NCBI GenBank assembly: GCA_033442325.1 | Contig: JAWQFM010000018.1 | Span: 843,172-907,171 of the forward strand | From: Salpingoeca rosetta | Lineage: Eukaryota; Protista; Choanoflagellata | Length of the DNA stretch: 64,000 nt | Reading direction: 5' to 3' | Shown here: piece after piece, positions 27,699 to 38,392 of the stretch | How the letters are laid out: each line of letters opens with the position of its first letter | Numbering within the stretch: the first letter of the stretch is position 1 | Translations under genes and position numbers: made by a program | Notes under the pieces: generated by a model | Databases searched by the model: none | Told to the model about the DNA's origin: nothing | The model's input: the letters and a program-made list of their open reading frames with translations, nothing else

Positions 27699-29506
27699 GG
27701 TGGTGGTGGTGGTGGTGGTGTATGAGTTGAGTGGGAATGGATACAGTCCACTTCTTCAGCAGAACTCCAACCACACAGATAAACACGCGCACACATCCAA
27801 ACACGCCGCACCCCCACCTTTGGCTGCTTCTGCTTTACGCGTGTGTTGGTTGTGCGGCGGTGGCGAACAGGCGTGGCTACTTTCGATGACAATGATGGTG
27901 ATGTTCTTGTTGATGATGATGCTTCCCTCGTGTCAGCCTTGCGAGCTCTGCTTTGCCGCTGCCTCTGCTGCTTCTTGGGCTGCTTGCCATCTTTGTTGTG
28001 TGCAGTGTGCCGCGCTGTCCTGCCATTTGCTGCACTCCCACTCGTCTTGGCCCTCTTGCTGCGCACCGGCCGTGCATCCTCTTCATCCTCTTCATCCTGT
28101 TCATCCTCTTCACCTTCATCTTCATCTTCGCGTTTGCCACGGTTGTGACGTTTACCACCTCCACTGCCGGCGGCCTTGCCACTGCCGCTGCCTCCCTCCT
28201 CCTCAGCCCTACCCTCTTCGTCGTCTTGTTCCTCTGCCATGGCGGTGCTGGTGCTGGTGGTGGTGTTGTTGCTTCGCTTGGGCGTTGCCTTCACCCGCCG
28301 CGGCTGTGTCGGCTGTGTCGGCTGTGCCTGATCCGCACGTTCACTCACCACCCCGCCCGTGTTGGTCACCGTTGTGAGGGGAGCGCCGCGGCGACGTGTG
28401 CCGTTCTGTGTTGCCAACTTCCTGGCCCCCTTATTCTTCCTGTTGTTTGCCTTTCCGCGGGTGCTGATTGCAGCATACTCGTCGCCTGCCTGGCTCGGTG
28501 GGACGCTCCCCAGCTTCAGTTGGGAGCCGGCGATGGAGGGCGGGTCTTGCGTCTCCATCAGCTTCTCCATCGTCTTGACAAACAGCACCACCTCCGAAAT
28601 CTACACAGAGAATGGGGGGTTGGGGGGTTGGGGGTTGGGAGGGAAAGTGTGTCGGGAGGTGAAAGGCAAGCGAGTGTGGGTGAAGAAGGAAGCAGGAGAG
28701 ATGACGGTGTGCGACACGACAATTGCGCAAGTGGGCACACCCAGACGCACGCAATTAAAGGGAGAGCGAGAGAGCAACGAATGGATGCAATGGCAACTAC
28801 ATTGCTAGCAACAGCATAGCTGGCAAGCAGCAACATAGCCACGCATTACAAACCTGGTCACTTTCGACAATGTCACGGGGAAAGCTGGGCCGCTTGCACT
28901 CGGGACACACGCTGTTGTCCTCCAGTGCTTCAACGATGCACTCCCTGTGATGCGAGTCAAGGCAGAGGGAGAGAAAGGGAGAGAAGGGGGTGTGAGGGGG
29001 GGGGGCGAAGAGAAGCTGGCTTGCAGGTTGGCGTGGGTGCAAACTCGTGTGTAAGCTCGTGTGCATGTGGTTTGGACGTGTGCAAGTACCGCTGAACGCA
29101 CTTGCAGAAGAGATGATCGCACTCCAGGAGACAGCGTGGTTCCTCAGGCATGTTGCAGCTGTAAAGAGGACGCGAGCGCGGAGAGCGAGATAGAGAGAGG
29201 TGGGGTTGGTGAAGAGGTGCAGGAAGCAGCAAGCGGGAAAGAGAGATGGGGGGGGAAGGCAGGGAGAAGGAGAGGGGTAGGGAGAGAGGGGGAGGCAGGG
29301 AGAAAGGGAGAGGAGAGAGGAGAGGAGGGGAGAGGAGGCAGGGAGAAGGAGGGGAGGCAGGGAGAAGGTGGGAGGCAGCGAGGTGGGAGACAGGGCAGGC
29401 ACACAGACAGACACACAGACACACACACACACACAGACAGAGAGACAGACACACACACACACGCACGCACACACACACACACAGACACAGACACAGACAC
29501 AGACAC

Positions 29507-29581
<75 letters not shown>

Positions 29582-29731
29582 CACACGCACACACACACAC
29601 ACACATGTACACACAGACACACAGACACACACACAGTACACCGAGCGCACTCACCAGAGACGACAGCGCGCTGCGTTGCGCACAGCGGCCATCCCCGCCA
29701 CACTTTCGCGCCATTCGCGGCTCACATCCAT
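23955..29731 (-). CDS. BARD1: BARD1-like protein: RING, ankyrin repeats and tandem BRCT
   Basis: Spliced [46 protein letters not shown]. Ankyrins [20 protein letters not shown]...GDTPLHDA...GHTPLD. BRCT VTHVL...[27 protein letters not shown] and terminal [16 protein letters not shown]-stop. The domain order is diagnostic of BARD1. Confidence 0.88.
27551..27720 (+). repeat. (GAT)n/(GGT)n intronic microsatellite in the BARD1-like gene
   Basis: Direct reading; on the sense strand it is (CAC)n(CAT)n running up to the acceptor. Confidence 0.95.
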
Positions 29732-29909
29732 CGTTCTTATCGAAAAATGAACAAGATTTAATGGGATTGTAACGCAGTACACGACATAAAAAAAAAAACC
29801 AGAAGGCAGCAGTCGCGGCTTTCTCTCTCTCTTCCCCTCTCTCTTCCTCCTCTCAACTCTTACGTCACCCACCTCACGTCACCCCACCACCACGCAAACA
29901 GCGCCATCT

Positions 29910-30814
29910 TCAAGCTTGCAGCGCCATCTGCTGGTTAGGGGCTCGAAGAGGGGTGAGGTTAGTTCGCTCCGCAAATGGGAGCTGTCGCTTGGCGCCGGGA
30001 GAGCGTGTGATGTCGTTTGTGTGGCTGTTGGTGTTTGTTGTGGTTTTGAGGGTGATGAGCGGAGCGGGCACAAACGTGGCGTCCTCTTCTTGCCGCTGCT
30101 GCTGCTGCTGCCCTTGCTGTTGCTGGTCGGTGCTGTCCTCGTAGTCGCTACTGTACATGGAGGATTGTGAGCGCTCGTCCTCGTTTGCAATGGCAGCAAA
30201 CGTTGGGCTCTCGAGGTCGTCCTGCGGCGCGTCCTCGTAGGCGTGGTAGTCGTCTGCTTCGGCGCTGTCTTCCTCGTCCTCTTCCCCATTGTCACCCTCA
30301 TTGCCTTGCTCTGCGATGGGGTGCAGCTGCCTGGTACCCGCGTTGGCTGCGTTCTGGCCAATCTTCGCCTCACGCATGGAGCACATGATGGCGTTTACCG
30401 CGGCCCGCTCGCCTGCTCTGTCGACTTCATCACACGACTCTGTCAGGTCGCAGCACGGCAGCGGCGAGTCGTCTCGCGACTCAATGGGAATCTGCACACA
30501 ATCACATCCAATCGGGCAAGAGTGGGGAAGATGTGTGTGTGTGTGCGTGTGTGCGTGTGTGCGTGCGTGCGTGCGTGCGTGCGTGGGTGTGTGTGTGAGC
30601 TGGAAGAGAAAGCGAGACAGGTTATGAGGGAGGGGAATCATGCGTGTTCCCGATAAGAGAATTGTGTGTGGAGCGAAGCTTACGTAGTCGGAGGTGACGG
30701 GCAGCGGGGTGCGAGGCACTGTTGTCGACTACACATTTGCGTGGCATGAGATGAAGGGAATGCAGGGCGAGCCATTACGGAGCAATGCAGGGTGAGCTAG
30801 TGGGCGACCTTCTT

Positions 30815-30849
<35 letters not shown>

Positions 30850-31000
30850 GGGACACAACAGCACCTCAACACACACACACACACAGACACACGCAAACAC
30901 ACACCGGTGATCGAGGGTCGATGAGACGTGCTTGAAGATGCTTTGATGGGGTGGCGGGCTCTGGTTTGGCCGCGCTACTGCGAGACGCGTTGGCACCCAT
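29910..31000 (-). CDS. Small disordered protein resembling CDCA3/Tome-1; exons 31000-30905, 30728-30684, 30491-29910
   Basis: Spliced N-terminus MGANASRSSAAKPEPATPSKHLQARLIDPRSP|STTVPRTPLPVTSDY|IPIES, all phase 0. It has an MGxxxS myristoylation motif and the KHL..R..DPRSPS....RTP motif recalled from vertebrate CDCA3. Confidence 0.65.
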
Positions 31001-31870
31001 GGCGATGACGATCAATTGATGTTCCAACCGCTGGGTTTTGTGAAGCTGAAGCTGGTGAATGGAGTAGGGAAATGGAAGTGTCGTGGGCACTTGGGGTCTG
31101 TGTGCGTGGCTATGAATCCTTCGTGGGGTTTCCTGTTCAGCACAAGAGAAGAGACACAAGCACAGCAATCAGTCGGGTGAGCGCGGGAGCTCGAATGCAT
31201 CGACCAGAGGCAGAAGCTGTTTCACCAGAGAAGAACACATCAGAGGAGGCAAGGCAAGTCACGCCACAGGGTTCGCTCGGTTGCGTACGGTAGCAGATGA
31301 ATGCGATGCTGCTCTGACAACACAGCACAAGGTCGGGCCAATGCTTGGTGCTTGTTTGGTGCTTGCTTGGTGCTGGTTGCTTGGCTTCGTGTGTGGGTGT
31401 GTGTCTTCTTTCCTGCCTTGCGTCGTCTGTGGTGGTGGTTGGTGATGATGGAGATGGCGTGTGATGCAAGGAGGGGAAAGAAAAGCAAAGGTGAGGGACC
31501 CTTTTCCGGAAGCCTGAAGCTGCCGCAGCTTGCGATTGCTTCTGCTGCTGTTGTGACTGCTTCTGTTTGGTGCTGTGTGTGATTGTTGTGTGCGTGCAGA
31601 TGAGTCAGCGATGGCTGCGTGTCATAGGCTATGTGTATGTGATGATGTTTGGTTGCTTGTTTGCTTGTTTGCTTGTTTGCTTGTGCGTGATGATGATGAC
31701 AATGCCGACCTTGAGGCGTGTGATTCACGATGAGAGAGTGTGTGTGTGGGCTGGCGCAGGGAAGGGTGCGTGTGTTTGAGTGTTTGAGTGAATGGAGGCT
31801 CTTGCTTGGTTTGGTTGCTTGTTCGTCATCGATGTCATCAAACCTTGAACAACCGTCACCCACCTGCGCT

Positions 31871-31885
31871 GCCGCGAAATTTGAA
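31871..31885 (+). promoter_or_regulatory. E2F/CDE plus CHR-like element GCCGCGAAATTTGAA between the divergent CDCA3-like and WDR74 genes
   Basis: GC-rich box immediately 5' of TTTGAA (31880-31885). This is a motif match only. Confidence 0.35.

Positions 31886-35447: not shown

Positions 35448-38392
<2,945 letters not shown>

What the first reader, a model, noticed from the sequence alone, without database searches (positions are those of the whole stretch)
29910..31000. Candidate pre-metazoan CDCA3/Tome-1 revealed only after splicing
Seen: joining exons gives MGANAS...TPSKHLQARLIDPRSP|STTVPRTPLPV. Known (from recall): human CDCA3 begins MGSAKSVPVTPARPPPHNKHLARVADPRSPSAGILRTPI, is myristoylated, promotes Wee1 turnover and is an APC/C substrate. 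Here there is also a degron-like C-terminal RQLPFAERTN and several S/TP sites, including SPGAK and TPLR. The motif is split by an intron in a disordered protein, so pipelines would probably call it hypothetical. Inference: this mitotic-entry regulator predates animals.
Basis: partly seen in the sequence, partly recalled or inferred. Interest (0 to 1): 0.7.

Follow-up and report, generated by a model that had tools for sequence, protein, structure and literature searches.

The report
Choanoflagellate relative of cell-cycle protein CDCA3
An expressed three-exon gene of the choanoflagellate Salpingoeca rosetta encodes a disordered protein. Its first 45 residues match the N-terminus of animal CDCA3, so at least this part of CDCA3 is older than animals, but the rest of the protein and its function are not shown to match.

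Summary
The minus-strand exons 31000-30905, 30728-30684 and 30491-29913 give a 240-aa protein. Two assembled transcripts from separate studies and stranded RNA reads use these junctions. The same model is already public as "hypothetical protein PTSG_06893 [Salpingoeca rosetta]".

- **Forward search:** phmmer against 1.84 billion proteins gave one meaningful non-self hit (E 8e-4). It starts MG and carries four DPRSPSxxxxRTP repeats. Its relatives include NCBI-named CDCA3 of an insect, amphibians and reptiles.
- **Reverse search:** a profile of vertebrate CDCA3 N-termini scores P0001 at 34 bits (E 1e-8 at proteome scale). The best of 20,000 shuffles scored 10.8 bits.
- **Linker:** the stretch before the motif also matches on its own (9 of 20,000 shuffles reach it).
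- **Uniqueness:** the genome holds no other copy of the motif.

Only residues 1-45 are shared.
- There is one repeat, against two to five in animals.
- There is no KEN box, and the family's D-box profile does not match.
- The intron position is not shared, and USP5 is not adjacent.

A role in mitotic entry is therefore inference. I read it as a divergent pre-metazoan CDCA3-family member. I found no paper that reports one.

The parts
30905..31000 (-). Coding part of exon 1 (aa 1-32). It holds the MGANAS myristoylation signal, the TPSK site, KHL, and the first half of the motif (DPRSP, 30905-30919).
   Evidence: The Kozak context is GCCATGG. It is the first in-frame ATG after the TGA at 31725-31727 in the spliced 5'UTR.
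31001..31132 (-). 5'UTR part of exon 1
   Evidence: contig pieces reach 31131, and the joint 31131/31288 (cut +1) has 30 and 119 reads; no ATG and no stop in frame.
31133..31288 (-). 5'UTR intron (156 nt, GT..AG)
   Evidence: joints table and zero depth.
31289..31426 (-). Upstream 5'UTR exon. Most reads splice from its 5' end to an exon ending at 31710; some transcripts read on past 31500.
   Evidence: loose ends at 31428 (30 reads in X22) whose letters match 31711-31740, and contig pieces covering 31288-31500. One search gives the sequence.
30729..30904 (-). Intron 1 (176 nt, GT..AG, (GT)n-rich). It splits the motif between DPRSP and STTVPRTP, in phase 0.
   Evidence: zero depth in most of it, and two transcript contigs are contiguous across it.
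30684..30728 (-). Exon 2 (aa 33-47), STTVPRTPLPVTSDY: the second half of the motif.
   Evidence: an exon-wise match in the own genome.
30492..30683 (-). Intron 2 (192 nt, GT..AG, CA-rich in its 3' half)
   Evidence: joint 30491/30684 with 10 and 11 stranded reads and two contigs.
29910..30491 (-). Coding part of exon 3 (aa 48-240 plus the stop). It is disordered, with a very acidic centre (aa 106-175: 24 D+E against 1 K+R) and a Q-run. No relative was detected for this part.
   Evidence: only a self hit; no Pfam family; composition; the ESM Atlas model has pLDDT 0.45.
29940..29966 (-). RTNLTPLRA (aa 223-231): the only D-box-like RxxLxx[LIV] string in the C-terminal half. It is a candidate only.
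   Evidence: RxxL list; the family D-box profile does not pick it out above shuffles.
29742..29909 (-). 3'UTR, with the poly(A) site at 29742
   Evidence: loose T-runs before 29742 in X21, X22 and X5, and the contig piece ends at 29742.

Best explanation
PTSG_06893 is a real, expressed, single-copy gene of Salpingoeca rosetta. It encodes a 240-aa intrinsically disordered protein.

Its N-terminal 45 residues carry four elements:
- an MGxxxS signal for N-myristoylation;
- a TP site;
- KHL;
- one copy of the motif DPRSPSxxVPRTPL.

These residues share descent with the N-terminal module of animal CDCA3 (Tome-1). The gene is therefore a divergent, pre-metazoan member of the CDCA3 family.

The likely mechanism is inferred, not shown. 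The lipid anchor would place the protein at a membrane. The motif, with two proline-directed sites (PRSP and PRTP), would act as a phosphorylation-controlled docking site for a conserved partner, most plausibly within the CDK network. The acidic, rapidly evolving remainder would carry lineage-specific functions.

Shown: the gene structure, its expression, the motif match and its uniqueness in the genome. Inferred: myristoylation, phosphorylation, any cell-cycle role and any APC/C-dependent turnover.
For: - **Gene model and expression:**
- **Forward search:** phmmer of P0001 against 1.84e9 representatives gives P0003 (E 8e-4) as the only non-self hit that matches the N-terminal motif, through four DPRSPSxxxxRTP repeats. 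The other hit (P0002, a 2526-aa protein) matches aa 179-221 in nine stretches; I did not inspect it and took it for compositional.
- **Link to CDCA3:** P0003's relatives include NCBI-named CDCA3 of Anabrus, frogs, a caecilian, a newt and snakes. Most begin MGxxxS, and all but one carry 2-5 repeats.
- **Reverse search:** hhalign of the vertebrate alignment against P0001 gives probability 93%, E 2.6e-7. The vertebrate N-terminal HMM scores 34.0 bits, E 1.3e-8 at Z=12000, aligning 1-43 with 1-45; the best of 20,000 shuffles scores 10.8 bits.
- **Linker:** residues 7-27, outside the motif, match on their own (9 of 20,000 shuffles reach the score). This favours descent over convergence.
- **Motif quality:** the choanoflagellate motif has every invariant residue and the consensus residue at most variable positions (L at -2, V at +8, P at +9, L at +13).
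- **Uniqueness:** there is no other copy of the motif and no paralogue in the 55-Mb genome.
Against: - Similarity is confined to about 45 residues of a disordered protein.
- There is one repeat, whereas nearly all animal members in hand have two or more.
- The family's C-terminal D-box profile and the vertebrate post-motif segment do not match above shuffles.
- There is no KEN box.
- The intron that splits the motif is absent from the abalone and snake genes.
- USP5, head-to-head with CDCA3 in abalone and snake, lies 794 kb away here.
- The six-frame search of the genome with the vertebrate profile did not itself return this locus, because the motif is split.
Confidence: 0.7

Rival explanations
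1. Convergent short linear motif. An unrelated disordered, myristoylated protein independently evolved the same docking motif because it binds the same conserved partner. There would be no common ancestry with CDCA3.
For: Disordered proteins gain and lose short motifs readily. Nothing beyond residue 45 matches. The copy number, intron position and gene neighbourhood all differ.
Against: The match covers about 11 fixed positions, plus the same placement directly after an MGxxxS start (D28 here, D26 in vertebrates). The linker also matches on its own. That is far more than the 3-5 positions typical of convergent motifs.
Confidence: 0.17
2. Mosaic gene. Only the first two small coding exons descend from the CDCA3 ancestor, and they have been joined to an unrelated C-terminal exon in the choanoflagellate lineage. 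Alternatively the animal C-terminus, with its D-box and KEN box, is a later addition.
For: The homologous part coincides with exons 1-2, and the unmatched part with exon 3. Exon 3 has no relative in 5.8e9 proteins.
Against: Disordered acidic regions diverge beyond recognition without any shuffling. Overall length (240 aa against 214-448) and layout (N-terminal motif, acidic middle, basic S/T-P-rich tail containing an RxxLxxL) are similar to the animal proteins.
Confidence: 0.1
3. Chance resemblance, or an artefact of annotation or contamination.
For: The similarity is short, and the global E-value of the forward hit is modest (8e-4).
Against: The score is 34 bits against at most 10.8 in 20,000 shuffles. 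The motif is unique in the genome. Transcripts from several studies confirm the splice. The gene sits in a 1.38-Mb contig of the organism with its typical (GT)n introns.
Confidence: 0.03

Closest known systems
Vertebrate CDCA3 / Tome-1 (amphibian and reptile sequences P0012, P0019, P0020, P0023, P0034, P0041)
   Same: - An MGxxxS start.
- A TP site, then (K/R)HL, about 20 residues in.
- DPRSP[ST]xx[IV]PRTP[IL] at residues 26-39 (28-41 here).
- Disordered, with an acidic middle and similar length.
- 47% identity over residues 1-45 with the caecilian protein.
   Different: Vertebrates have a second repeat about 40 residues on, a conserved segment LNxLAKQLSExF, the D-box RSPLxILQxDNSP and a C-terminal KEN box. 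In human these are R198 and K258 (PMC8163776). None of these four elements is detectable here. The F-box-like, Skp1 and Wee1 activity (reported in the literature; cited in PMC8163776) could not be tested.
Invertebrate CDCA3-like proteins (Anabrus simplex P0005, named CDCA3 by NCBI; Haliotis asinina P0039, named "uncharacterized"; many unnamed transcriptome proteins such as P0003 and P0004)
   Same: Most have the same MG start, and all carry the same repeat. The first repeat of P0004, VVDPRSPSTLVPRTPISV, matches 14 of 18 residues of LIDPRSPSTTVPRTPLPV. Many of them also lack a KEN box.
   Different: They carry 2-5 repeats and a clear D-box (RTPLSCVAN, RTPLGVLNR or RSPLSTVVID). In Haliotis the gene is head-to-head with USP5, as it is in the snake.
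EukProt EP01112 Ceratiomyxa fruticulosa P011840 (P0038)
   Same: It starts MGxxxT, has three DPRSP..RTP repeats and ends in RTPL. It is a possible second non-animal member.
   Different: It is a transcriptome-only record from a slime mould, so contamination cannot be excluded. Its Asn-rich composition and at most 37% identity to any animal member argue for an authentic amoebozoan gene.

Membership tests
CDCA3 / Tome-1 | N-terminal Met-Gly with Ser/Thr at position 6 (N-myristoylation signal); seen in most members in hand | tested here: met
   MGANASR. M1, G2 and S6 are invariant in the vertebrate alignment and present in most invertebrate members. The modification itself was not tested.
CDCA3 / Tome-1 | Motif DPRSP[ST]-x2-[IVF]-x-RTP-[LIV] | tested here: met
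   DPRSPSTTVPRTPL at aa 28-41. It has all invariant positions, and consensus residues at -2, +8, +9 and +13. The vertebrate profile scores 34 bits.
CDCA3 / Tome-1 | Two or more copies of the motif | tested here: not met
   One copy here. Nearly all of the roughly 40 other members in hand have two to five.
CDCA3 / Tome-1 | C-terminal D-box R[ST]PLxx[LIV]x[NDE] (human R198, PMC8163776) | tested here: not met
   The profile of 31 family D-boxes does no better than shuffles (5232 of 20,000 reach the score). Only a pattern-level candidate exists, RTNLTPLRA at aa 223-231.
CDCA3 / Tome-1 | C-terminal KEN box (human K258, PMC8163776) | tested here: not met
   P0001 has no KEN. The KEN box is also absent from many invertebrate members, so it does not define the whole family.
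CDCA3 / Tome-1 | Reciprocal retrieval in sequence searches | tested here: met
   Forward: the only N-terminal-motif hit among 1.84e9 proteins is a family member. Reverse: E 1.3e-8 at proteome scale, and no competing locus in the genome. Caveat: the six-frame genome search did not list this locus, because the motif is split.
CDCA3 / Tome-1 | Head-to-head neighbour USP5 (seen in abalone and snake) | tested here: not met
   The only zf-UBP_var (USP5-type) gene is at C18:80168-80556, on the same contig but 794 kb away.
CDCA3 / Tome-1 | F-box-like region, Skp1 binding, Wee1 turnover, Cdh1-dependent degradation | not testable with these tools
   There is no Pfam model for the family. These are biochemical properties reported for the frog and human proteins.

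The most novel reading that the evidence does not exclude
The conserved core of CDCA3 is not its degrons or its reported F-box-like activity. It is a myristoylated N-terminal DPRSPS-x4-RTP docking module that arose before animals. If the Ceratiomyxa record is authentic, it arose before the split of Amoebozoa and Opisthokonta. Its still unknown partner would then be an ancient, unstudied element of cell-division control that could be worked out in the genetically tractable S. rosetta.
Probability: 0.3. Interest if true: 0.6.

Novelty: new member of a known kind. Interest (0 to 1): 0.45.

Why it matters
CDCA3/Tome-1 is studied almost only in vertebrates and in cancer. The two papers I opened set its N-terminal region aside as unstructured (PMC8163776, PMC9926468).

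This study shows three things:
- The N-terminal module is the most conserved part of the family across animals.
- It is present in the sister group of animals.
- It is there as a single copy in a single-copy gene.

That moves the origin of the family before animals. It also points to an uncharacterised motif as the ancestral function and offers a simple organism in which to find the partner. None of the papers I could search links CDCA3 to any unicellular holozoan.

The gain is moderate. This is one remote homologue of a mid-profile protein, and its function is still inferred.

Tried and rejected
- **Pfam on exons 1 and 3:** nothing.
- **Word-based search with exon 3, and with residues 1-50 of P0001:** only self.
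- **ESM Atlas feature search:** low-scoring unnamed animal clusters only, no structure.
- **Six-frame search of the own genome with the vertebrate profile:** two chance-level hits (HHLAHVLQPRS, LTHVIDPTTTTAGLPR), and not the locus itself.
- **Shared intron position as a test of descent:** the abalone and snake genes have no intron inside the motif.
- **Adjacent-gene synteny with USP5:** not adjacent.
- **Profile tests for the D-box and for the vertebrate post-motif segment:** no signal, even though hhalign had extended its alignment over that segment.
rejected as a D-box, because it reads RxL, not RxxL.
- **Neighbouring ORFs:** only a Peroxin-13 gene could be named.
- **Locus tag PTSG_06893 and the string DPRSP in papers:** nothing relevant.
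- **Genomic DNA for frog CDCA3 (P0012) and a record for snake isoform X2 (P0034):** not obtainable.
- **Joining exons:** not done by me; the joined model was used only as the database protein P0001.

Full report
**What is there**

On the minus strand the sequence reads ATG at 31000 in the context GCCATGG. An open exon runs to 30905, followed by GT. An AG precedes 30728, and a 45-nt exon runs to 30684, followed by GTAAGC. An AG precedes 30491, and an open frame runs to the stop at 29912-29910.

The window is contig C18:843172-907171 of a 55.4-Mb genome. An exon-3 search returned one protein, P0001, "hypothetical protein PTSG_06893 [Salpingoeca rosetta]". It is 240 aa, and its sequence is the three exon translations in order.

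Every search used single exons by reference or this database protein.

**Is the junction used?**

Yes.

- **Contigs.** Transcript contigs from two separate studies (X5 record 3 and X12 record 1) are contiguous over 31288 / 31131...30906 / 30729...30684 / 30491...29742.
- **Raw reads.** Raw stranded RNA reads of two further runs show the 30491/30684 joint (10 and 11 reads) and a 5'UTR intron, 31133-31288 (30 and 119 reads). Depth is zero in most intron bins and at most 2 elsewhere, against 6-200 in exons.
- **Direction and 3' end.** First mates lie on the + strand, as expected for a minus-strand RNA in a standard stranded library. A poly(A) tail starts at 29742.
- **Gap in the evidence.** The tool skipped the (GT)n stretch 30807-30905, so the first coding junction rests on the two contigs, the depth profile and the public gene model, not on counted reads.

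**Start codon**

In the main spliced 5'UTR the frame upstream of the ATG is open through 44 and 46 codons without an ATG. It ends at a TGA at 31725-31727. Gly2 is therefore the true second residue.

**Forward search**

- Pfam finds nothing, and word-based searches find only self.
- phmmer of P0001 against 1.84 billion representatives gave three hits at E <= 0.001:
  - itself;
  - P0002, a 2526-aa protein matching aa 179-221 in nine stretches, which I did not inspect and took for compositional;
  - P0003 (E 8e-4).
- P0003 begins MGASES and carries four repeats DPRSP[ST]xxxxRTP, each aligning to residues 26-41 of the query.
- Searching with P0003 returned 40 proteins. [quoted passage not shown]
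- Most begin MGxxxS, and all but one carry two to five repeats. Most also carry a C-terminal D-box R[ST]PLxx[LIV], and the vertebrates and some others end in a KEN box.
- The D-box and the KEN box are the degrons mapped in human CDCA3 at R198 and K258 (PMC8163776).

**Reverse tests**

| Test | Result |
|---|---|
| hhalign, seven vertebrate CDCA3 proteins against P0001 | Probability 93.4%, E 2.6e-7 |
| HMM of their first 48 residues against P0001 | 34.0 bits, E 1.3e-8 for a 12,000-protein proteome; end-to-end alignment 1-43 with 1-45; best of 20,000 shuffles 10.8 bits |
| Linker residues 7-27 alone, outside the motif | 10.8 bits; 9 of 20,000 shuffles reach it |
| Profile of 31 family D-boxes | No better than shuffles |
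| Vertebrate segment after the second repeat | No better than shuffles |

The motif has every invariant residue and the consensus residue at most variable positions.

In the whole genome there is no paralogue. No unsplit DPRSP-x(4-6)-RTP occurs in any frame. The vertebrate profile finds only two chance-level strings elsewhere. That six-frame search did not list the locus itself, because the intron splits the motif, so genome-wide reciprocity is shown only indirectly.

**What does not match**

- There is no KEN box.
- The D-box profile and the post-motif segment give no signal, as the table shows.
The only D-box-like string in the C-terminal half is RTNLTPLRA (aa 223-231), which a random sequence of this composition would often contain.
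- The abalone and snake genes have no intron inside the motif.
- In both of those animals a USP5-type gene lies head-to-head with CDCA3. In S. rosetta the only such gene is on the same 1.38-Mb contig but 794 kb away.

**Reading**

Chance is excluded. The choice lies between common descent and convergence of a docking motif.

Three points make descent the better reading, at about 0.7: the number of fixed positions, the same placement right behind a myristoylation signal, and the independent match of the linker. What can be claimed is homology of the N-terminal module, and on that basis family membership as a divergent member.

The mechanism is inferred: a membrane anchor, and two proline-directed phosphosites (PRSP, PRTP) forming a regulated docking site. 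Any role in mitotic entry, Skp1 binding or APC/C-dependent turnover is untested.

**Novelty**

No paper in the searchable library links CDCA3 to choanoflagellates or other unicellular holozoans. The two CDCA3 papers I opened set the N-terminal region aside as disordered (PMC8163776, PMC9926468).

The protein itself is already in public databases as hypothetical. This is a new, remote member of a known family, and it is of moderate interest.

Noticed in passing
L005:1-6441 (Haliotis asinina) and L008:1-8586 (Thamnophis elegans); own genome C18:80168-80556: CDCA3 lies head-to-head with a USP5-type deubiquitinase gene (zf-UBP_var, zf-UBP, UCH, two UBA) in both a mollusc and a snake, 460-680 bp apart. 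In S. rosetta the only zf-UBP_var gene is on the same contig as PTSG_06893, 794 kb away. That contig is 2.5% of the genome. This is a post hoc observation.
   Followed up: partly
P0038 (EukProt EP01112_Ceratiomyxa_fruticulosa_P011840): A slime-mould transcriptome protein starts MGVQHTK, has three DPRSP..RTP repeats and ends in RTPL. It is Asn-rich and at most 37% identical to any animal member in hand. If it is authentic, the family is older than Opisthokonta; contamination is not excluded.
   Followed up: partly
window 31872-31885, minus strand: The only TTTCGCGG in the 64-kb window (E2F-like) directly follows TTCAAA (the reverse of the CHR core TTTGAA) in the 5' region of this gene. One TTTCGCGG per window is expected by chance, and the transcription start was not mapped.
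   Followed up: partly
window 28797-29733, minus strand: A separate transcript (X5 record 2, with reads spliced at 29655) lies just downstream of the poly(A) site. Its frame reads ...[19 protein letters not shown]..., which looks like part of a RING-type zinc finger. A very long (GT)n tract covers 29500-29650. Pfam gave no hit on the raw ORF.
   Followed up: partly
window 36058-36909, plus strand: An ORF matching the Peroxin-13 N-terminal region (PF04088, E 2e-25).
   Followed up: no
window 30729-30904 and 30492-30683: Intron 1 is GT-repeat-rich from its donor onward. Intron 2 is CA/CG-repeat-rich towards its acceptor. This is the same kind of repeat-rich intron that another note on this window describes.
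   Followed up: no
window 31289-31500 and 31404-31428: The 5'UTR has alternative forms. Most reads splice at 31426 to an exon ending at 31710, a minor form splices at about 31404, and two assembled contigs read on unspliced past 31500.
   Followed up: no
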